From positions 1 through 64,000 of the IMG/VR virus record IMGVR_UViG_3300020473_000010: a stretch of 64,000 nucleotides of DNA. One strand, 5' to 3'. How positions within the stretch are numbered: the first letter of the stretch is position 1; each line of letters opens with the position of its first letter. Position numbers and translations under genes: made by a program. The notes beneath the pieces were generated by a model. That model was not told where the DNA came from, searched no databases, and saw only the letters and a list, made by a program, of their open reading frames with translations. This document shows positions 3 through 13,590 of the stretch, one piece after another.

Positions 3-355
3 TGGTGGAGGCGGCGGGAGTCGAACCCGCGTCCGCAATAGTCTAAGTTTGAGTCATTCACAAGCTTGTCTGGTTATTTCTCTCCCAGTGAGATATCCAA
101 TGTGTTTTATACTCCATAGTCCATGGCGGAAGGAGTTCTACCTTAGTTTTATTTCTTGGCTGTTTTCCAGTAGATCAATCAGCTAAAGTCTCTCTTGGTT
201 AGATGGTTTGAGACGACCACCCGATTATGCCGCTAAGCGTTCAGAATCGTAAAAGTAATTGTTATTGGCAATTATAAAGTTTGAACAGTTAAGGTCGTAT
301 CTTACCTACTTGCACTCTCCCCCGGATTCTACTCCGTCGAAGCCGGTACGCCCCC
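3..355 (-). ncRNA. ssrA: tmRNA (SsrA); tag ANNNYFYDSERLAA*
   Basis: Minus strand starts GGGGGCGTACCGGCTTCGACGG and ends GGTTCGACTCCCGCCGCCTCCACCA (tRNA-Ala-like ends, T-loop, encoded CCA). Internal tag frame 269-225 ends LAA-TAA. Confidence 0.95.
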
Positions 356-375
356 TTGTTAATAAATACTAATAT

Positions 376-404
376 ATTATACGTTAGCATGCTAATTTGT
401 ACAT
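376..404 (-). promoter_or_regulatory. sigma70-like promoter for tmRNA
   Basis: ATGTAC-17 nt-TATAAT about 20 nt upstream of the tmRNA 5' end. Confidence 0.55.
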
Positions 405-415
405 AAGTACTAATA

Positions 416-1354
416 TTATGCTATTAACCAAACCAAAACTATACTCAGGGCTAATCCAACCATCATCTTCATAAAATCAGATACCAACATTGGAAACACA
501 ACTTTTATTCCATCTTCTGATTTGAAATGTCTATAGACCGCTAATTCACGACCACAGAGAAGACCTACAAAAACCCAAGTAGTAGACATTGGAATGTCGT
601 TATATTGTTTGAAATACCACAAAATAAGAGCATAAGCAAAATCGATTATCGTTGCTGATCTCATAAACCTAGTTCCAGACTTTGATAGTACTATCTCTTG
701 AATTTTACCACCCCTTGTGTAAAACAAATGAGCTAGGCCGGCAACTAATATACCCATAAAACTTATAAACATCCAAACTGGTAGTGCTTCTCCTCGAGGT
801 AAGAAAACGGCGACGTTTGCTATGTCATGGGCTAACCACTGGTGCCATAGAAAACAGGTCGCGACCCACTGTGCGATTCTCCACTTAGATTTATTTTCTT
901 CGGCTATTGGCGCTCTCTCATCTAAGAACTTAGAAAGCAAAGTCCAAAGAATATAAGCTGAGACTGCTGCCAAAGCATAACCGACAGCTGATTTTATCAA
1001 AATCTTTTCTAGTACAAAAGAAGAAGAGAAAACACTGAGTGTTAGTATTGTCGTGGATACTGGAACCCCAAATCTGGTAAGTCCCAACAACAAAGCCGGA
1101 GCAGCAAGATGATACCACTGAAACGTTTCTGGGAGAGGAATTGAATTTAATCTTCCATGTGCGATGTCTCCGGACATGTAGCCGTATGTAAGTGTTGCGA
1201 CCATAACAGAGGCCATCACTAGCCATTGATAGTGCCACTTTGTTTCTTTGTTTGATGCTATGAATGTCCCAAGTGTTTGGGCGCTATCATTCGCGATTAC
1301 GGAGTATGCAGCCAACAAGAAGCCGAGAACTCCAAATATTAATGTTAATTCCAT
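416..1354 (-). CDS. Polytopic membrane protein, PiT-like phosphate/anion permease
   Basis: About 10 hydrophobic segments; duplicated signature-like motifs ANDSAQTLG and AHDIANVA, and PMSTT. Confidence 0.65.
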   Translation of the reverse strand: MELTLIFGVLGFLLAAYSVIANDSAQTLGTFIASNKETKWHYQWLVMASVMVATLTYGYMSGDIAHGRLNSIPLPETFQWYHLAAPALLLGLTRFGVPVSTTILTLSVFSSSFVLEKILIKSAVGYALAAVSAYILWTLLSKFLDERAPIAEENKSKWRIAQWVATCFLWHQWLAHDIANVAVFLPRGEALPVWMFISFMGILVAGLAHLFYTRGGKIQEIVLSKSGTRFMRSATIIDFAYALILWYFKQYNDIPMSTTWVFVGLLCGRELAVYRHFKSEDGIKVVFPMLVSDFMKMMVGLALSIVLVWLIA

Positions 1355-1362
1355 TGTTTATC

Positions 1363-1662
1363 CTAATAAGTTAAATCGATTCGCATTGCTGGTCCGGGAG
1401 AGAATACCCAGTTGTCTTTTCGTTTATTGTCAATCTGTAAATGCGGATCGATTCGAATGTAATCATTGATCTTGTATCGGAAGCCCAACCTGAATTTATT
1501 TGCGTCAAAGGTCGTGGTGAATCCATCACTAACTAATTTTACCTCGTTTGCAACATAAGGTTTTATATCGGATCCAAAATCATACGTAATTCTAGTATTG
1601 TTGGCTATTATGATTTCGCCGGCATGGACTGTATTTAACAGCGATAACAATAACAAAATCAT
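1363..1662 (-). CDS. Small secreted protein
   Basis: Signal peptide (LLLLSLLNTVHA), beta-strand-rich, aromatic C-terminus RIDLTY. Confidence 0.6.
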   Translation of the reverse strand: MILLLLSLLNTVHAGEIIIANNTRITYDFGSDIKPYVANEVKLVSDGFTTTFDANKFRLGFRYKINDYIRIDPHLQIDNKRKDNWVFSPGPAMRIDLTY

Positions 1663-1756
1663 AACTAACTCCTATCACTGTTTAAAGCAGTTATAGATAT
1701 TCTATTATAATCTCGAGAGTACTAATTGTTTTGTAACGTTTCCATGACCTAAATTA

Positions 1757-1782
1757 AAAGAAGGGGCCAAGGGCCCCTTCTT
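1757..1782 (-). terminator. Rho-independent terminator
   Basis: Hairpin AAGAAGGGGCC/GGCCCCTTCTT followed by T-run on the minus strand, downstream of the lipoprotein gene. Confidence 0.75.
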
Positions 1783-1805
1783 AGCATGAGTATGTGAAGA
1801 TGAGG

Positions 1806-1967
1806 TTATTCTTCCTCTTCAGCCTCTTCTTCCTCTTCCTCTTCAACTGGTTGAGAGGTATCGGATTCTTCAACTTCTTCATCGACTGCAGTATCTGCAT
1901 CTTTATCTTCACAGGCAACCAAGCCTAGACCCATAAGCATAGATCCAAAAATTACCATGGTTCTCAT
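1806..1967 (-). CDS. Small acidic lipoprotein (53 aa, not in ORF track)
   Basis: MRTMVIFGSMLMGLGLVAC-EDKDADTAVDEEVEE...EEEE*; lipobox LVAC; RBS AAGGAG. Confidence 0.8.
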   Translation of the reverse strand: MRTMVIFGSMLMGLGLVACEDKDADTAVDEEVEESDTSQPVEEEEEEEAEEEE

Positions 1968-2096
1968 AACGTCTCCTTATTTTTAGTTATATTCTGAGAA
2001 ATCACAATATACAATGTCTCGCAAAAGTGTTAACTCAAAGCTTTTTAATTATAATAAATTAATTCGAAATTTATAAACGGTGACACGGTTGTCACA

Positions 2097-2663
2097 TTAA
2101 TTTTCTAGAAAATGCATTAAACATTTTGGTTGATACATTTCAGCGCCGCCAACCTCTATCTTATGATCAGATCTGCCACCGATTTTTTTAGTATAATAAG
2201 CATCGGCGCCACATGATGAACAAACCGCGGGGCAAACCTCTATTTTCGTTGCAAATGGAAGCATGCACTGTACTTCTTTATAACTGGTAAAATCGGACGA
2301 TAATTGTAGTGATGATACTAAAATAGGGTGGCCCTGCCGGAAAAGGTTAACTAAAACAGATCCTACGTCAGGAATCATAAAAGCTTCATCAACGGCGATG
2401 ACTGTATGAGACAATATTTCTCTGTTATGTCGAGGTGTTGATTCTAGAATTTCTAGAATATCGTTTCCGGAAGCAATTCTATTTGCATTTAATTTATGTC
2501 CCCAGTGTGTTACGATTTCTTCTTTTGAATATCTTTCATCAACGTTAGGTTTAAAGGCAATGATTTTTCTTCCTTGATATTTGTATCTGTCGATGGCGCT
2601 TAATAGTTTAGTTGTCTTGCCTCCAAACATAGGACCGACAAACATTACAAATTCATTTTTCAT
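2097..2663 (-). CDS. tdk: Thymidine kinase
   Basis: GPMFGGKTT P-loop, AVDEA, Zn-binding CSSC, GGAEMYQPKC; probable start MKNEFV. Confidence 0.92.
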   Translation of the reverse strand: MKNEFVMFVGPMFGGKTTKLLSAIDRYKYQGRKIIAFKPNVDERYSKEEIVTHWGHKLNANRIASGNDILEILESTPRHNREILSHTVIAVDEAFMIPDVGSVLVNLFRQGHPILVSSLQLSSDFTSYKEVQCMLPFATKIEVCPAVCSSCGADAYYTKKIGGRSDHKIEVGGAEMYQPKCLMHFLEN

Positions 2664-2715
2664 TTTTAACTCCGGTAACAAATAATTATATGCAGTTTAT
2701 AAGGAGATTTATAAC

Positions 2716-2952
2716 ATGTTAATGATTTTATTTTGCAGTTTAGCATTTGCGCAAGAACCAGAAGAAGAACCAAAAATTGTTTATAAACAGAAAACAGAGA
2801 TAGACTTCGAAGGGTTAGAAATAGAGGGACAACTATTAAAACCACAAGGGTCTTTAGTATTAGAGAGGAAGAAAGCAACGTTTAATCCTCTTATTCAGTT
2901 AAGAACAGATTTTAATCATGAAATGAAGATGTCTGTTGAAGAGATAAAATAA
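2716..2952 (+). CDS. cglF: Adventurous gliding motility protein CglF/GltF homologue
   Basis: Signal peptide, then KQKTEIDF..EG.L.KP.GS.VL.RKK..F..LI..R..F..E...S, matching the CglF family pattern as I recall it; RBS AAGGAG. Confidence 0.8.
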   Translation: MLMILFCSLAFAQEPEEEPKIVYKQKTEIDFEGLEIEGQLLKPQGSLVLERKKATFNPLIQLRTDFNHEMKMSVEEIK

Positions 2953-3058
2953 GATAAGAATATATATTAATTGATAAGAATATTATAATTGAGAGTGAAT
3001 TGTTGTAGGGGAAGCGGGAAGCTTAAGCTCAAAAAACCTCGAAAAAGGATAAAAATAT

Positions 3059-4594
3059 ATGCCTAAAATAAAGAACATGGGAACATCAAGAATGAGATTC
3101 AACGAGGGGATAATTGTCTCTGGATCTGAAGAAGGTGGTGTAGCACTTGCAGTAGCCCACGATATATCAAGTGAGTATGTTGTAACAATTGACAACGACC
3201 AGGGAAATCAGGGGCATGTACTAAAACTTTTTACAGATGGAAATGGTAGTAATACTCGAGTTTTAGAAATGGAAGATGGTGATGGGGACACTATCTTTCG
3301 AGCCCGAGCTGATGGTAGATTTGGCTTTGGGCCAGATGGCGTCAGCAGTATGGGTGCAGGAACCTTTGTTGTTGGAATCGATAATTCTGCTCATACATCA
3401 GATATAGCGATATCCCGAAGATTGCAGCATCTCGGAGATGCAAATACGTATCTAGATTTTCCTGTGGGTGACCAGATGCAGTTCCAGGTCGGTGGTGTTG
3501 ATATGATCCATATGACTGAAAACAATTCGCAAGATACAATTGTTTTTAATGGCGGTGAAGCGGATGTTGACTTTATAGTAAAAAGTAATAATAACAACAG
3601 TATGTTTTTTGTTGATGGTGGTAACAACAAAGTGGGTATAGGGATAAATACCCCGGGAACAGTCTTACATGTTGACGGAGGAACCGATGCCTCTAGGTCA
3701 ACAGCTAATAGTGGCCACTTAATTTTAGGACCTACGAATGGGACCAATATGGTGCTTGATGGAAATGAAATTATAGCAAGAAACAACGGGCAACCAAACA
3801 CACTATATTTAAATCACCAAAGCGGAGGAGTGCATATTGGAGATTACAACGGGGTTGTTATGGGATCAGAAACTTTTAGAGTTTCTGGGGACACTATAAT
3901 TTCCGGAAGCTTAACTGTCAACTTAGGAGGAAGTGGAGAAGTTGTAAAGATTGCCGGTGAATTAGATGAAAATGTCAGTCTAGTCTTCGAACAGCCCATG
4001 GGAACAAACAGGGCTTCAATTGGTCTAGATGGCGGAGATAATATGGATATTGCCAATTACTCAGCATGGGATGATATTAATATTATGACCACATCCGGGG
4101 CTGGGACTTTAACTGGCTTAGTTATAACAGCACAGCAAAGAGTTGGTGTCGGAAATTTTGGCTGGGAAGGGAAAGGTCCGGTTGGCGATCCAGCAACCGG
4201 ATATGGTTATAATGCACCATTCCCGTCTTGCGAGCTAGATGTTTCCGGATCGATGAAAGTATCTGAATCTGCTACTTTTAAAGGCTCGGTTTATAAAAAT
4301 ACGACCGTTGTAAACTCGTCTCCATATACTGTACAGCCCAGTGATTATATTTTGTTAGTAAATACATCAGCTACTAGAGTGATAAATCTTCCTGCTAAAG
4401 CCAATGAACTAGGCAGGATATTAATAATTAAAGATGCATCTGGGAATGCTGGTAACCAGACTATCACAATCAGCCCAAATGGAACCGAGCAAATTGATGG
4501 GGATGATCAAAAAAATATTACAAACAATTATAAAGGGTTAACAATTCTTTGTGGGCCAGATCAATGGCACAGAATTTCTGAATATGATATGTAG
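3059..4594 (+). CDS. Tail/head fibre-like virion protein
   Basis: Gly/Asn-rich beta repeats (VGIGINTP, VGVGNFG); C-terminal INLPA..GRILIIKDASG..TITI..NG.E.IDG module typical of phage fibres. Confidence 0.65.
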   Translation: MPKIKNMGTSRMRFNEGIIVSGSEEGGVALAVAHDISSEYVVTIDNDQGNQGHVLKLFTDGNGSNTRVLEMEDGDGDTIFRARADGRFGFGPDGVSSMGAGTFVVGIDNSAHTSDIAISRRLQHLGDANTYLDFPVGDQMQFQVGGVDMIHMTENNSQDTIVFNGGEADVDFIVKSNNNNSMFFVDGGNNKVGIGINTPGTVLHVDGGTDASRSTANSGHLILGPTNGTNMVLDGNEIIARNNGQPNTLYLNHQSGGVHIGDYNGVVMGSETFRVSGDTIISGSLTVNLGGSGEVVKIAGELDENVSLVFEQPMGTNRASIGLDGGDNMDIANYSAWDDINIMTTSGAGTLTGLVITAQQRVGVGNFGWEGKGPVGDPATGYGYNAPFPSCELDVSGSMKVSESATFKGSVYKNTTVVNSSPYTVQPSDYILLVNTSATRVINLPAKANELGRILIIKDASGNAGNQTITISPNGTEQIDGDDQKNITNNYKGLTILCGPDQWHRISEYDM

Positions 4595-4598
4595 TAGC

Positions 4599-5117
4599 TT
4601 AAGGGATCCAAAATTTTCCATCCATTTTGTGGAATAATGGATGCATGATATGACCTTCTTTTTCATAGTGTGCATATCCTAAGGCATGCCCTAATTCATG
4701 CTCGTTTATCCACTGTAGGTTTTGAGAACCCGGACGATAAGTTATTACAGCTCCTTTGATTTCGGTGAGCGAAGTCCATCTTCTAGTTTCTGCAAGGACA
4801 CCTGATTCGTGATCAAATCTGCCTCCTTTACGCAAGATAATAAATCCTTCTAAGTATGTATCTTCGCAAAGCATTGGCGGTGGATTATGTTCGTAAAAGC
4901 CAATATCATGACCTTTTTCTTCCCAATAAGTAACAGCACGCTGCATTTGAAGTTCTGAAAAATCATCACCATAACAATTTACTATTATTGGAGGCATATT
5001 ATCTTTCCATTCATACGGCTGAAAAGCTGTAGTTTCATAGACGTATTTTATGCCTGTGCCAAATAAGAACCCACTTAAAAAGCCGAACAATACTTTGATT
5101 ATAATTGATGGTTTCAC
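4599..5117 (-). CDS. Matrixin-like (metzincin) zinc metalloprotease, membrane-anchored
   Basis: HELGHALGYAH extended zinc motif plus Met-turn IMHP; N-terminal hydrophobic anchor. Confidence 0.8.
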   Translation of the reverse strand: MKPSIIIKVLFGFLSGFLFGTGIKYVYETTAFQPYEWKDNMPPIIVNCYGDDFSELQMQRAVTYWEEKGHDIGFYEHNPPPMLCEDTYLEGFIILRKGGRFDHESGVLAETRRWTSLTEIKGAVITYRPGSQNLQWINEHELGHALGYAHYEKEGHIMHPLFHKMDGKFWIP

Positions 5118-6670
5118 TCACCACATCCCCAAACTGCATAGTCAATATCGATTGTTTGTCCCTCGTCAGGAACATGGCCATCGTTAAAAATTATGGCATT
5201 AATGCTAGGGTCATATGTCCAATCAGTCGTAACTTGACCATTAACAGAAACTTCTATAGTTTCTTCTATGGGGTCAGGCTCATCTAAATAAAATGTTCTT
5301 CTTCCGGTAACTTCTCCAGCTAAATCTTGCAATTGTACTCCCCAATCAGCAGCACAAATCGAATACCAGGAGCCCCCATAATTGTCAATTAAGTCCCAAT
5401 ATCCAGCGCCAAAGGCTGCAGTTGGATACGAAGATCCGCACCCAGAAGGATAGTCTCCAATAACTCCGTACGGAATAAAGTCGCCTTCTGGCTTAATTCC
5501 ATCAAAAAACGATAAATAAGAACTCCATCCCCCAGAAGAATAATCAGGTTCATCAGAAACAAATATTACAACCAATTTTGCATCCTCTCGAAAGAAATTC
5601 CCGCCAGGGCCTGCAGCTGAACTTGTGCTAAGACTTCTTTGGGCCATCTCAATTCCTTTTTCCATTCCGGAACCATAGACTCCAGTCATTACTAAATTAC
5701 TTAGTTCTGTTTCAGGATCTGGGTGGGAAGGATCAACAATCGTTGAAAAGGTATATCGATCAGTCGTTATAACAGCCATTCTATAATCTGCTCCAGAAGA
5801 AATAAATGCGGTCATAAAAGAACCAATATTGGCTGACAAGTTTGTTTGATGCGGATTCATCGATCCGGAATTATCGATTACCCAAATAACATCTAAAACT
5901 GGAATTTCTTCTTGTTGATATTGTTGGTTAAACCATTGCTCAACATCGCCATCACCAAATTGTACAACATCAGCCTGTGGGTTTAGAGGATCATTCCCGA
6001 TAACGGTAATCAAGCTCTCATCATATCCAATATCGGTTGGTATATATGATACTAAAAAATCTATTTCTTGTCCAGGAATCAATACCCAGGGAGGTTCTGG
6101 AAGTGATCCGTATTCCATTAAGATATCAGCCGGCTGTGTAACCATCTGACTAATTGAACTTACAGTCAAATCCATATTTCCTTCGTTTCTGATCGTGACT
6201 CGCTCTTCATTATCACACCCGATACTAATGTCACCATAATCAAATTCCGAAGGACCTACAGCCATAACAGGGGCATCTCCGTATCCTTCAAGGGTAACTT
6301 TTAATACTGGCTCATCTTCATCATCTGAAAGTATTTCTATATATGCGCCATTTGATTCAAAAGTTTCCGGAACATATCCAACTTCAAACTCTATTAATTC
6401 TCCAGCGCCGATTATGTATTCACTCTGATCTGTCTGGAGTGAAAATCTAGTATTCCCGGAAACTAAAACGGGAGCAAAGATTGTTAAATCTGCGTCTCCC
6501 GTATTGATGACTGTGAATGTATCTAGCCCTGATTCAGCGCCGGCAACTAAATGGCCGAAGTTGATGTGTTCTGGGTGGACCAAAATTTCTTGTTGTCTTT
6601 TTTCGATCCCGGCAATCATGTGATCACTACACCCTGCCAGGAGAAGACTAAAAACTGTTAATAACCTCAT
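5114..6670 (-). CDS. Lipoprotein with two Ig-like (choice-of-anchor D/ASH-like) domains and a vWA domain
   Basis: Lipobox LAGC; repeated INTGDADLTI / IRNEGNMDLTV Ig modules; MIDAS DNSGSM, G.EKG, FVSDE. Confidence 0.8.
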   Translation of the reverse strand: MRLLTVFSLLLAGCSDHMIAGIEKRQQEILVHPEHINFGHLVAGAESGLDTFTVINTGDADLTIFAPVLVSGNTRFSLQTDQSEYIIGAGELIEFEVGYVPETFESNGAYIEILSDDEDEPVLKVTLEGYGDAPVMAVGPSEFDYGDISIGCDNEERVTIRNEGNMDLTVSSISQMVTQPADILMEYGSLPEPPWVLIPGQEIDFLVSYIPTDIGYDESLITVIGNDPLNPQADVVQFGDGDVEQWFNQQYQQEEIPVLDVIWVIDNSGSMNPHQTNLSANIGSFMTAFISSGADYRMAVITTDRYTFSTIVDPSHPDPETELSNLVMTGVYGSGMEKGIEMAQRSLSTSSAAGPGGNFFREDAKLVVIFVSDEPDYSSGGWSSYLSFFDGIKPEGDFIPYGVIGDYPSGCGSSYPTAAFGAGYWDLIDNYGGSWYSICAADWGVQLQDLAGEVTGRRTFYLDEPDPIEETIEVSVNGQVTTDWTYDPSINAIIFNDGHVPDEGQTIDIDYAVWGCGE

Positions 6671-12567: not shown

Positions 12568-13590
12568 CTAAACAAAAACTGTATTAAATTGCTGAGTACA
12601 CCTAATAAAAGTTGTGCATTTGCTTAATTGTTTTAATGTTGGCGCTCCAACATATGTACATGTTGATCTTAATCCACCTAGAATATTAGATACGGTATCT
12701 CCAATTTTTCCTTTAAAGGGAATAGAGACTGTTCTACCCTCAGAAGATCTATAGCTAGCTACTCCGCCAGAGTGTTTATTCATAGCAGTATCAGAACTCA
12801 TTCCGTAAAATTCTATTTTTATATCTCCATTTTCATCTAAAACTCTTCTGCCGCCACCTTCTTCGTGGCCGGCAAACATTCCTCCCAGCATAACGAAATC
12901 AGCACCAGCTGCGAAAGCTTTAGCAACATCACCCGGACTTGTGCATCCACCGTCAGCAATGACATGACCACCTAAACCATGGGCCGCATCTGCACACTCC
13001 ATGACAGCAGAGAGCTGGGGGTATCCAACACCGGTCTGAATTCTAGTTGTGCAGACAGAGCCTGGCCCTATACCGACTTTTACAACATCGGCGCCGGCCA
13101 AAATGAGTTCTTGTGTCATATCAGCGGTTACAACGTTTCCGGCAATGATGTTAATTTTTGGCCAATCGTTTCTTACAACCCGAACAAAATCAACGAAATG
13201 CTCAGAATACCCATTAGCAATATCAATACAAATCCACTTCAGGTTATGTTTAACTATAATTTTCTTTGCTTTCTCATATTCCTTATGATTTGTTCCAACA
13301 CTCACTGCTACATAATCTGTCTTGTGATCATATGCATCCCAGTCTTTTAGTGAATTCTGTTTTGTAATACAAGTAAATAGTTTTCGAAAACTAAGCTCAA
13401 ATGCCATTTCGAATGTGCCAACCCCATCCATATTAGCTGCCATGACTGGGATTCCACACCACTGTTGGTGGCTATTCCGGAATTTATATGTTCTTTCTAA
13501 ACTTACTTGCTTCCTAGAGCGCAAAGTAGATCTTTTAGGCCTAATCAAGACATCTTTATAATCTAATTTAATATCAGGTTCAATTCTCAT
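12568..13590 (-). CDS. guaC: GMP reductase (type 1)
   Basis: [61 protein letters not shown]. Confidence 0.95.

What the first reader, a model, noticed from the sequence alone, without database searches (positions are those of the whole stretch)
2716..2952. Phage-encoded homologue of the myxobacterial gliding protein CglF/GltF
Seen: a 78-aa exported protein with KT.IDF....EG.L.KP.GS.VL.RKK..F..LI..R..F..E...S. Known: this pattern matches CglF/GltF of the Agl-Glt gliding machinery, found in Myxococcota and Bdellovibrionota. Inference: it identifies the likely host group. A phage copy could jam or tune the motility complex, mask a receptor (superinfection exclusion) or alter movement of infected cells. 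I know of no described phage gliding-motility gene.
Basis: partly seen in the sequence, partly recalled or inferred. Interest (0 to 1): 0.75.

Follow-up and report, generated by a model that had tools for sequence, protein, structure and literature searches.

The report
Phage copy of gliding-machine protein GltF
A 289-kb marine T4-like phage, like many uncultured relatives, carries a conserved, host-derived copy of GltF, the small periplasmic connector of the myxobacterial gliding machine. This suggests these phages put their own subunit into the host's motility and adhesion apparatus, and I found no published report of that.

Summary
ORF 2716-2952 (+) is a real gene with a ribosome-binding site. 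It encodes a 78-aa protein with a short signal peptide that matches NCBIfam gliding_CglF (E 1e-14, 54 bits).

That score is under the curated cut-off of 90. However, the positional GltF of aquatic Myxococcota MAGs, which sits in a gltC-D-E-F-G-H cluster, also scores only 58.7 bits and is 66% identical to the phage protein.

The contig is a phage:
- It has T4-like capsid, portal and terminase genes and is rated 96% complete.
- Independent assemblies from several marine samples span the locus without a break.
- A related phage contig bridges the two ends of this record.

The gene is common in uncultured T4-like phages (GC 36-57%). It is under purifying selection, its composition matches the phage, and 13 of 14 context-verified phage copies form one clade.

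It usually lies just upstream of a tail-fibre-like gene. It is often near an exported lipoprotein with two Ig-like domains and a von Willebrand A (VWA) domain, and a metzincin protease.

A complex model docks its C-terminus into the TPR crevice of a MAG GltC (score 0.79, best control 0.24).

Two residues that are invariant or nearly so in cellular copies (E39, M70) are relaxed in phage copies.

The most likely role is replacement of the host subunit in the Glt machine. The host and the effect on the cell are inferred. I found no published precedent.

The parts
2716..2952 (+). gltF/cglF-like gene. It encodes a 78-aa pre-protein: signal peptide about residues 1-12, acidic linker, then a conserved 56-aa core (Y23 to K78).
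   Evidence: ORF. NF033764 hit at E 9.6e-15. Alignment A1 has 15 invariant columns and no indels in the core. Non-synonymous to synonymous difference ratio (pN/pS) 0.15-0.35 between phage copies; GC3 0.29. Docks into GltC in the complex model through residues 56-78.
2701..2706 (+). Shine-Dalgarno-like AAGGAG, 9 nt upstream of the start codon.
   Evidence: Read directly from the sequence.
3059..4594 (+). 511-aa tail-fibre or baseplate-like virion protein. It is co-oriented with the gltF-like gene and lies 107 nt downstream.
   Evidence: Homologue follows the gltF-like gene in L010 (36% identity), and in L005 it follows the giant gene (53% identity over 409 aa, Laminin_G_3). Weak phrog_972 'tail fiber proximal subunit' hit, E 7e-4. 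Atlas look-alikes are all viral and include T4_gp9_10_N, Peptidase_S74 and Mtd_N.
5114..6670 (-). 518-aa lipoprotein (LAGC lipobox) with two choice-of-anchor-D Ig-like domains and a VWA/MIDAS domain.
   Evidence: Pfam and NCBIfam hits: choice_anch_D 1.7e-19, VWA_2, partial CglD VWA region 6e-11, Bdellovibrio MIDAS adhesin 2e-8. Found beside the gltF-like gene in L008, L010, L011, L014/L015 and L019. A cellular lipoprotein of the same architecture lies about 8 kb downstream of gltF in L023 (26% identity over 320 aa). Bacterial look-alikes are Myxococcota.
4599..5117 (-). 172-aa membrane-anchored metzincin (HELGHALGYAH motif). Its start overlaps the end of the lipoprotein gene by 4 nt, so the two look like an operon.
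   Evidence: Peptidase_M10 hit at 1.2e-6. Conserved next to the lipoprotein gene in L010 (42% identity) and present in L014.
2097..2681 (-). Thymidine kinase, transcribed divergently from the gltF-like gene. It is a conserved neighbour.
   Evidence: PF00265 hit at 1.7e-31. The same TK-then-gltF-like arrangement occurs in L005/L006 and L079/L080.
416..1354 (-). PHO4-like membrane permease, a conserved neighbour.
   Evidence: Weak PF01384 hit. 87.5% identical in L010; a same-length PHO4-like protein lies next to TK in L079.
3..355 (-). Phage tmRNA gene at the very end of the contig, tag ANNNYFYDSERLAA.
   Evidence: ARAGORN. Rfam RF00023, 102 bits. The assembly breaks here and depth spikes.

Best explanation
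The gene encodes a phage-made GltF, the small periplasmic connector of the Agl-Glt (bacterial focal-adhesion) machine.

Proposed mechanism:
- In an infected cell the pre-protein is exported by Sec and its short signal peptide is removed.
- The roughly 66-aa mature protein takes the place of the host's GltF. Its C-terminal segment (F56 to K78) lies in the TPR crevice of GltC, the periplasmic face of the outer-membrane platform.
- Its invariant TEIDFEG strand pairs with the TonB-like C-terminal domain of GltG, the arm of the inner-membrane motor.

The phage copy keeps the family's core but has relaxed two positions that cellular copies hold fixed: E39, in the GltG-binding strand, and M70. It is also encoded next to a tail-fibre-like gene.

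From this I infer that it is a replacement subunit that changes how the machine behaves, rather than a simple spare part. The most likely purpose is to control a receptor or DNA-entry route that depends on the Glt complex. That could mean superinfection exclusion or keeping the surface adhesin masked, possibly working together with the neighbouring exported VWA lipoprotein and metzincin.

Shown: homology, phage location, conservation, composition matching the phage, and predicted docking to GltC.
Inferred: export, incorporation into the machine, host identity and the effect on the cell.
For: Homology and orthology:
- NF033764 hit at E 9.6e-15.
- 66% identity to the gene lying between gltE and gltG in MAG clusters that hit the GltC, GltE, GltG and CglE models.
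- That cellular gene scores 58.7 bits, about the same as the phage copy.

Phage location:
- Hallmark phage genes in G000.
- Locus spanned by independent assemblies.
- Same gene order in L010, which also bridges the ends of G000.

Long residence in phages:
- pN/pS 0.15-0.35 with synonymous sites saturated; GC3 0.27-0.41 (up to 0.79 in the high-GC phages) against 0.68-0.96 in cells.
- 13 of 14 context-verified phage copies form a clade, support 97/93.

Binding:
- Complex model with MAG GltC and the GltG C-terminal domain: score 0.79, best of 3 controls 0.24. That mark was reached by 51 of 78 solved complexes and 2 of 108 mismatched pairs.
- The interface is phage residues 56-78 against GltC residues 248-552.
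- This matches the published AlphaFold model, in which the GltF C-terminal helix sits in a GltC crevice and a GltF strand lies on the GltG TonB-like domain (PMC11761067).
- No solved relative exists, so the model is not recalling a known structure.

Altered constraint:
- E39 is Glu in 53 of 53 cellular copies but in only 2 of 12 distinct viral copies.
- M70 is Met in 52 of 53 cellular copies but in 4 of 12 viral copies.

Link to host recognition: the gene lies immediately upstream of, and co-oriented with, a fibre-like or giant gene in several phage lineages.

Precedent: prophage-encoded FimU is built into the type IV pilus and blocks phages whose tail proteins co-vary with it (PMC12952977).
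Against: - No experiment or transcript supports any step. RNA runs from one of the samples hold none of the locus.
- GltF is periplasmic, so it cannot itself be an adsorption receptor. The exclusion idea therefore needs an extra step.
- Confident contacts to the GltG domain were few (two residues). I could not run the native GltF as a control, and a close relative of a true partner is expected to pass this test.
- The core of the protein is as conserved in phages as in cells, which fits a plain functional copy equally well.
- The host is not identified. The phage has 36% GC against 52-71% in all cellular carriers found.
- The nearest cultured phage by capsid infects Flavobacterium.
Confidence: 0.45

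Rival explanations
1. Plain auxiliary copy. The phage supplies a fully functional GltF to keep the host's gliding and adhesion machine running after host gene expression is shut off. The infected cell then stays attached or keeps moving on particles while progeny are made, in the way cyanophage psbA supports photosynthesis.
For: All interface segments and 15 invariant columns are kept, the core has the same length and no indels. There is strong purifying selection. Docking to GltC is predicted as for native GltF. Phage-to-cell divergence (about 35%) is within the range seen among cellular copies.
Against: E39 and M70, invariant or nearly so in cellular copies, are relaxed in phage copies. Only one of about 14-17 machine genes is carried: no other G000 protein matches the glt-flanking loci apart from the VWA lipoprotein and an IMPDH-like gene. 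Nothing indicates that GltF is limiting or short-lived. The adjacency to a fibre-like gene is left unexplained.
Confidence: 0.3
2. Inhibitor or decoy. The phage protein binds GltC, or a TonB-like domain, without coupling it to the motor. This jams the complex and stops motility, for example to immobilise the infected cell or shut down an energy drain.
For: The model gives confident contacts to GltC but very few to GltG. The score falls to 0.24 when GltC is replaced. The cell-invariant Glu in the GltG-binding strand is lost in most phage copies, including this one (Q39).
Against: The TEIDFEG strand itself is invariant in phage copies. There is no native control for the weak GltG contacts. A decoy would be expected to lose one interface more thoroughly.
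Confidence: 0.15
3. The protein acts outside the Glt machine. It could be a secreted helper for assembly or function of the downstream fibre-like protein, or a general binder of TPR or TonB-like domains in a host that has no glt genes.
For: Tight, co-oriented linkage to fibre-like or giant genes in several lineages. Phage GC of 36% and a capsid nearest to a Flavobacterium phage leave the host open.
Against: A signal peptide is unusual for a fibre chaperone. The conservation pattern is the same as in cellular GltF. Every cellular carrier found has a glt cluster around the gene. In L011, L014 and L019 the gene follows a protease-like and a Nudix gene instead.
Confidence: 0.07
4. Artefact: a cellular fragment mis-joined to a phage contig, or host DNA flanking a prophage integrated at a tmRNA gene.
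For: The gene lies 2.7 kb from a contig end, and that end is inside a tmRNA gene, a classic integration site.
Against: 12,340-bp contigs in two runs and overlapping contigs in a third cover 297-6000 with 0 differences at even depth. L010 carries the same neighbours and continues into genes from the other end of G000. Gene GC3 is 0.29 like the phage, against 0.68-0.96 in cells. Thymidine kinase and fibre-like genes flank it in many phage contigs.
Confidence: 0.01

Closest known systems
GltF / CglF (MXAN_4868) of the Myxococcus xanthus Agl-Glt gliding machinery (NCBIfam NF033764)
   Same: Small secreted protein of about 80-90 aa with the same conserved core. The HMM match is significant. The nearest cellular relatives occupy the gltF position between gltE and gltG. 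The C-terminal segment is predicted to sit in the GltC crevice, as in the published model.
   Different: It is encoded by a phage, outside any glt cluster. It scores below the curated cut-off (54 against 90 bits). It has a shorter, nearly uncharged signal peptide. Two positions that are invariant or nearly so in cellular copies (E39, M70) are relaxed. No functional data exist.
Prophage-encoded FimU (P-FimU) of Pseudomonas aeruginosa phages (PMC12952977)
   Same: A phage-encoded homologue of a structural subunit of a host motility machine. It is proposed to be incorporated in place of the host subunit and is linked to phage tail proteins.
   Different: P-FimU is a surface-exposed minor pilin of type IV pili in temperate phages, and its incorporation and exclusion have been shown experimentally. 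Here the subunit is periplasmic, belongs to a different machine, is carried by T4-like jumbo phages, and nothing has been tested.
Receptor-blocking exclusion proteins encoded beside receptor-binding genes, such as T5 Llp or the Cor proteins of T1-like phages (recalled from general knowledge, not checked here)
   Same: A small exported phage protein encoded next to a host-recognition gene and acting on an energised envelope system.
   Different: Those proteins are not homologues of host machine subunits, and they bind an outer-membrane receptor directly.
Classical phage auxiliary genes of host origin, such as cyanophage psbA (general knowledge)
   Same: A single host-derived subunit retained under purifying selection across many T4-like phages, with composition matching the phage.
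   Different: This is not a metabolic function. There is no evidence that the subunit is limiting or turns over quickly.

Membership tests
GltF/CglF (NF033764 gliding_CglF) | Whole-protein score at or above the curated equivalog cut-off (90 bits) | tested here: not met
   The score is 54.4 bits. The positional gltF of MAG clusters also fails at 58.7 bits, as do five further MAG genomes at 53.6-58.7 bits. The cut-off therefore appears tuned to Myxococcus-type sequences.
GltF/CglF (NF033764 gliding_CglF) | Statistically significant homology over the full length of the family profile | tested here: met
   E 9.6e-15 over profile positions 10-88 of 88. 62-67% identity to cellular copies.
GltF/CglF (NF033764 gliding_CglF) | Small pre-protein (about 80-90 aa) with an N-terminal signal peptide and no other domain | tested here: met
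   78 aa, with a hydrophobic N-terminus whose A-x-A site aligns with cellular copies. M. xanthus GltF is 89 aa and signal-peptide positive (PMC3169522). Judged by inspection; no predictor was run.
GltF/CglF (NF033764 gliding_CglF) | Encoded in the G1 cluster between gltE and gltG | tested here: not met
   The phage neighbours are thymidine kinase and a fibre-like gene. No other glt homologue was found in G000.
GltF/CglF (NF033764 gliding_CglF) | C-terminal helix binds the GltC crevice and a beta-strand binds the GltG TonB-like domain (published AlphaFold model) | tested here: inconclusive
   Docking to GltC is supported in silico (score 0.79 against best control 0.24, residues 56-78). Only two confident GltG contacts were seen, and there was no native control.
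GltF/CglF (NF033764 gliding_CglF) | Residues invariant or nearly so in cellular members are retained | tested here: not met
   Most are retained: Y23, K24, T27-F31, G38, L40, P43, F56, N57 and S73. E39 (53 of 53 cellular copies) is Q in the window protein and non-Glu in 10 of 12 viral copies. M70 (52 of 53 cellular copies) is kept here but is I or L in 8 of 12 viral copies.
GltF/CglF (NF033764 gliding_CglF) | Required for gliding and localises to focal adhesions | not testable with these tools
   Needs genetics and microscopy (the M. xanthus data are in PMC3169522).
Phage-encoded replacement subunits of host motility machines (P-FimU type) | The phage encodes a homologue of a structural subunit of the machine | tested here: met
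Phage-encoded replacement subunits of host motility machines (P-FimU type) | Incorporated into the machine and protects against superinfection | not testable with these tools
   Only a docking prediction is available.
Phage-encoded replacement subunits of host motility machines (P-FimU type) | Linked to, and co-varies with, a phage tail protein | tested here: inconclusive
   Adjacency to fibre-like or giant genes is seen in several lineages. Co-variation was not analysed, and other lineages lack the adjacency.
T4-like (gp23-type) tailed phages | gp23-like major head protein, portal and large terminase | tested here: met
   phrog_138 at 1e-71, phrog_213 at 1.4e-74 and phrog_2 at 4e-50. The capsid is 38-50% identical to T4-like phages of Flavobacterium, Microcystis and Synechococcus.

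The most novel reading that the evidence does not exclude
A broad group of uncultured aquatic T4-like jumbo phages infects planktonic or particle-attached Myxococcota. They use the energised Agl-Glt focal-adhesion machine as their receptor or DNA-entry route, much as TonB-dependent phages use TonB. They control it with a small exported toolkit: a swapped periplasmic connector (phage GltF), an adhesin-like VWA lipoprotein, and a metzincin that could shed the host adhesin. Together these would mask the receptor on infected cells and change how those cells adhere.
Probability: 0.12. Interest if true: 0.85.

Novelty: new variant of a known kind. Interest (0 to 1): 0.62.

Why it matters
- I found no report of a phage carrying a component of the Agl-Glt gliding machine. 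The searches were full-text literature and 50,697 GenBank phage genomes.
- The gene is not a one-off. It is conserved across many uncultured marine and freshwater T4-like phages, so it marks a recurring interaction between phages and a trans-envelope motility machine.
- It gives a usable host marker for jumbo phages of uncultured aquatic Myxococcota.
- It offers a natural variant of GltF for study. The role of GltF is known only from genetics and structure models. The phage copies point to two positions (E39, M70) and one interface (GltC) that could be tested directly in M. xanthus.
- Alongside the recently described prophage FimU, it supports the broader idea that phages replace subunits of host surface machines.

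Tried and rejected
- Pfam and PHROG scans of the 78-aa protein found nothing meaningful.
- The sigma-70 promoter and terminator scan around the gene was no better than shuffled sequence. The T4 late-promoter motif TATAAATA is not enriched and is absent near the gene.
- In other phages (L014) a 242-aa and a 153-aa gene lie between the VWA lipoprotein gene and the gltF-like gene. They are not Glt proteins: one is serine-protease-like and one is Nudix.
- The 388-aa choice-of-anchor-D protein at the end of the MAG glt cluster shares only weak Ig-domain similarity with the phage lipoprotein.
- Taxonomy of the cellular carriers could not be refined. The tools give no GTDB names for genomes reached through loci. 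Record titles are unreliable, with some MAGs labelled Klebsiella or Rickettsiales. Cluster look-up returned no organism names.
- A spacer-like search of a 20-kb structural region against 81 genomes of the MAG order found only 31-60-nt matches at 78-90% identity. These clustered in one 215-nt stretch and are not CRISPR spacers.
- RNA evidence: metatranscriptome runs from one of the samples hold none of the locus.
- No solved structure exists for the family.
- The number of captures by phages is unresolved. A 185-row quick tree split the high-GC phage copies from the rest. A careful 70-row tree of context-verified rows puts 13 of 14 in one clade, with only the long-branched L018 outside. The AU test of all 14 as one clade gave p 0.035.
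- The donor lineage is unresolved; sister relationships have low support.

Full report

ORF 2716..2952 (+) encodes 78 aa. It starts at the first start codon after an upstream stop and has AAGGAG 9 nt before the ATG.

The protein hits NCBIfam NF033764 (gliding_CglF) at E 9.6e-15 and 54.4 bits, covering profile positions 10-88 of 88. No Pfam or PHROG family covers it.

In the 5.8-billion protein collection it has 481 homologues at E<=1e-3, mostly from marine metagenomes and mostly 60-78% identical. A profile search of 1.84 billion representatives finds 1,397 clusters at E<=1e-3 and 408 at 1e-10.

The N-terminus is a short hydrophobic stretch ending A-F-A, followed by an acidic linker. That site aligns with the A-x-A site of cellular homologues. 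I judged export by inspection, not with a predictor.

**2. Is it truly a GltF?**

The score is below the curated cut-off of 90 bits, so I examined what the nearest cellular relatives are.

P0095 is 66% identical and lies on contigs of NCBI MAGs labelled Myxococcota (L003, L004) and on a Tara metagenome scaffold (L002). The gene order there is:
- a GltC-like protein (NF033756, 242 bits)
- a 1,033-aa TPR protein in the GltD position
- a GltE-like protein (NF033758, 154 bits)
- the 84-aa protein
- a GltG-like protein (NF033760, 344 bits, with FHA and TonB-like C-terminal domains)
- a CglE/GltH-like protein (NF033755, 103 bits, above its cut-off)

This positional gltF scores 58.7 bits against NF033764, about the same as the phage copy. 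Five more MAG genomes give 53.6-58.7 bits. The failed cut-off therefore reflects how far this aquatic lineage is from the Myxococcus seed sequences. It does not reflect degeneration of the phage gene.

A pattern scan of GTDB species representatives found 59 loci. All are MAGs with 52-71% GC, and many are labelled Myxococcota or Deltaproteobacteria. Some titles are plainly wrong. Among 21 genomes comprising one of these MAGs (G001) and its sampled relatives, 20 carry the gene, often with a second paralogue.

**3. Is it truly in a phage?**

The window is bases 1-64000 of an IMG/VR record of 288,697 bp rated 96% complete.

The record encodes:
- a gp23-type major head protein (phrog_138, 1e-71)
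- a portal (phrog_213, 1.4e-74)
- a large terminase (phrog_2, 4e-50)
- ribonucleotide reductase and a DnaB helicase
- three tRNAs and a tmRNA

By my rough ORF calling, 341 of 376 genes are on the minus strand. The capsid is 38-50% identical to T4-like phages of Flavobacterium, Microcystis and Synechococcus and to uncultured huge phages.

The gene is only 2.7 kb from the contig end, so I tested for chimerism:
- Two runs contain 12,340-bp contigs covering 297-6000 with no differences and even depth.
- A third run has contigs 390-2263 and 2243-5864.
- A fourth has a contig covering 2527-3103.
- The break at the contig end falls inside the tmRNA gene, where depth spikes because of other organisms' tmRNAs.

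A related 53.7-kb viral contig (L010) has the same order: PHO4-like permease (87.5% identity), gltF-like gene, fibre-like gene, metzincin, VWA lipoprotein. Upstream it continues into genes matching G000 283,985-287,574. The two ends of G000 are therefore adjacent in a relative, and the locus is internal to the phage genome.

The gene's GC3 is 0.29. It is 0.27-0.41 in other low-GC phage copies and 0.68-0.96 in cellular copies.

**4. How widespread is it in phages?**

- Twelve IMG/VR contigs carry a relative, including contigs of 203 and 108 kb.
- The closest homologues all sit in phage-like contexts. P0009, on L005-L007, is 76% identical. P0074 is on L079/L080. P0055 is on L081.
- In L005/L006 and L079/L080 the context shows the same thymidine kinase or PHO4-like neighbours. 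L081 instead has many small ORFs and an IMPDH-like gene.
- Contigs with 52-57% GC (L009, L012, L017) also carry the gene. L009 has T4-type split topoisomerase II (phrog_543 at 2e-192, phrog_551 at 8e-136).
- Atlas look-alike clusters of the 78-aa protein are viral.
- No GenBank phage record has it.
- The locus was found in five marine metagenome runs with more than half of the sampled words.

Between phage copies, synonymous sites are saturated. Non-synonymous differences are 0.12-0.34 per site in all but the closest pairs. pN/pS is about 0.15-0.35, which indicates purifying selection.

In a careful tree restricted to rows whose context I had verified (14 phage, 56 cellular), 13 phage copies form a clade with support 97/93. 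Only the long-branched L018 falls outside.

A larger quick tree including 117 metagenome proteins placed the high-GC phage copies elsewhere, with weak support. The AU test of all 14 as one clade gave p 0.035. One old capture followed by spread among phages is the simplest reading. Two or three captures are not excluded, and the donor lineage is unresolved.

**5. Neighbourhood**

The gltF-like gene and the 511-aa gene downstream form a small plus-strand pair in an otherwise minus-strand genome.

The 511-aa protein:
- is homologous to the gene after gltF in L010 (36% identity)
- is homologous to the third gene of the L005 cassette (53% identity over 409 aa, Laminin_G_3)
- has only viral look-alikes, including baseplate and fibre families
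- has a weak tail-fibre PHROG hit

In L005 and L079 a giant gene (2,658 aa and more than 3,356 aa) lies between the two. G000 lacks it.

On the other strand is a 518-aa lipoprotein with two choice-of-anchor-D Ig-like domains and a VWA/MIDAS domain. The VWA part matches the VWA region of CglD (6e-11) and a Bdellovibrio MIDAS adhesin model (2e-8), both only partially. Its gene end overlaps a membrane-anchored metzincin by 4 nt.

This lipoprotein lies beside the gltF-like gene in at least five distinct phage contigs (L008, L010, L011, L014/L015, L019). Its bacterial look-alikes are Myxococcota. A cellular lipoprotein of the same architecture lies about 8 kb downstream of gltF in L023 (26% identity over 320 aa, E 2e-19).

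Apart from these two genes and an IMPDH-like gene, no G000 protein matches the roughly 0.9 Mb of cellular glt-flanking DNA I collected.

**6. How it probably works**

What is known about GltF in M. xanthus:
- It is a secreted envelope protein that localises to focal adhesions.
- It is needed for GltD clusters (PMC3169522).
- A published AlphaFold model places its C-terminal helix in a crevice of GltC and a beta-strand on the TonB-like domain of GltG. This bridges the outer-membrane platform to the motor arm (PMC11761067).

I modelled the mature phage protein with the GltC-like protein and the GltG C-terminal domain of MAG contig L003:
- The score was 0.79 in three runs, against a best control of 0.24. 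That mark was reached by 51 of 78 solved complexes and 2 of 108 mismatched pairs.
- Confident contacts run from phage residues 56-78 to GltC residues 248-552.
- Only two confident contacts reach GltG.
- The score fell to 0.24 when GltC was replaced.
- No solved relative exists.
- A close relative of a true partner is expected to pass this test. It shows likeness, not binding.

The conserved core is the same in phage and cellular copies, with two exceptions:
- Glu39 is present in 53 of 53 cellular copies but only 2 of 12 distinct viral copies. The window protein has Gln.
- Met70 is present in 52 of 53 cellular copies but only 4 of 12 viral copies.

By my mapping from the HMM alignment, position 39 lies in the strand that the published model puts on GltG.

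I therefore favour a replacement subunit with altered behaviour over a plain spare part. Its position next to a host-recognition gene points to control of a receptor or entry route that depends on the Glt complex. The experimentally shown prophage FimU case is the nearest precedent (PMC12952977).

A plain auxiliary copy and a jamming decoy remain serious rivals.

In M. xanthus the VWA adhesin CglB is shed by an unidentified metalloprotease when the outer-membrane platform is defective (PMC9946355). The phage's VWA lipoprotein plus metzincin pair is a suggestive parallel, but it is untested.

**7. Host**

Indirect evidence points to aquatic Myxococcota-like bacteria with glt clusters:
- the origin of the gltF-like gene
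- the look-alikes of the VWA lipoprotein
- a tmRNA tag that begins ANNN, as in one marine MAG lineage: ANNNYFYDSERLAA in the phage against ANNNNHFAAAAVA in the MAGs. This comparison has no outgroup control.

Against this:
- Phage GC is 36%, while cellular carriers have 52-71%. From general knowledge, such gaps are known for jumbo phages such as phiKZ.
- The nearest cultured capsid relative infects Flavobacterium.
- No direct link was obtained.
- Bdellovibrionota could not be sampled with the tools.

**8. Novelty**

Full-text searches found no report of a phage-encoded Glt or Cgl gene. A 2026 survey of myxophages never mentions glt or cgl.

The general idea of a phage homologue of a host motility-machine subunit now has one experimental precedent, P-FimU. 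I therefore class this as a new variant of a known kind.

It is notable for the machine involved, the periplasmic location of the subunit, and its spread in uncultured jumbo phages.

Noticed in passing
window 3-355 (-): Phage-encoded tmRNA (Rfam 102 bits) with tag ANNNYFYDSERLAA. The tmRNAs of the marine MAG lineage that carries a close GltF have tags ANNNNHFAAAAVA, ANNNNHFAATAVA and ANNNDNFAAAAVA, and the stretch before the resume codon is similar. The contig ends inside this gene, where assembly depth spikes. This is a weak host hint with no outgroup control.
   Followed up: partly
window 4599-6670 (-); L010, L011, L014, L019, L008; L023:8720-10570: An operon encoding a lipoprotein (two Ig-like domains plus a VWA/MIDAS domain) and a metzincin. 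It recurs beside the gltF-like gene in several phage lineages. Its bacterial look-alikes are Myxococcota, and a lipoprotein of the same architecture lies about 8 kb downstream of gltF in a MAG. This may parallel the CglB/CglD adhesins and the unidentified metalloprotease that sheds CglB.
   Followed up: partly
window 416-1967 (-): More envelope proteins cluster at this end of the genome. They are a PHO4-like permease (87.5% identical in L010), a 99-aa secreted beta-rich protein ending in an aromatic residue like an outer-membrane protein, and a 53-aa acidic lipoprotein. Neither of the two small proteins matches any family.
   Followed up: no
L005:2282-10258; L079:10250-20237: In related phages a giant gene (2,658 aa and more than 3,356 aa, no Pfam domain) lies between the gltF-like gene and the fibre-like gene. 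The two giants share 28-60% identity in patches. G000 has no counterpart.
   Followed up: partly
proteins P0182, P0186, P0187, P0215, P0256, P0279: A few long proteins (636-1,345 aa) contain a GltF-like stretch, near residues 800-1000 in five and near 470-530 in P0215. They may be fusions with a neighbouring Glt protein or gene-calling read-through.
   Followed up: no
window 12568-13590 (-): An IMPDH/GMP-reductase-like gene of 340 aa, 35% identical to the guaB that lies next to the glt cluster in the MAG contigs. A similar gene occurs in phage contig L081. This is probably only general family similarity.
   Followed up: no
G000 174,772-174,986 (L088:10772-10986): Short matches of 31-60 nt at 78-90% identity to six different Myxococcota-order MAG genomes, all falling within one 215-nt stretch of a 576-aa gene with no family. 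They are not spacer-like and remain unexplained; the stretch may be low-complexity or repetitive.
   Followed up: no
G000 whole record: Strong strand bias: 341 of 376 roughly called genes are on the minus strand. The gltF-like and fibre-like pair is one of the few plus-strand units. The record has no terminal repeat, but a relative (L010) joins its two ends.
   Followed up: partly
genomes G011-G025 (relatives of G001): Many cellular genomes carry two or three GltF-like paralogues at 34-63% identity to the phage protein. This may correspond to the Glt and Nfs-type systems described in M. xanthus.
   Followed up: no
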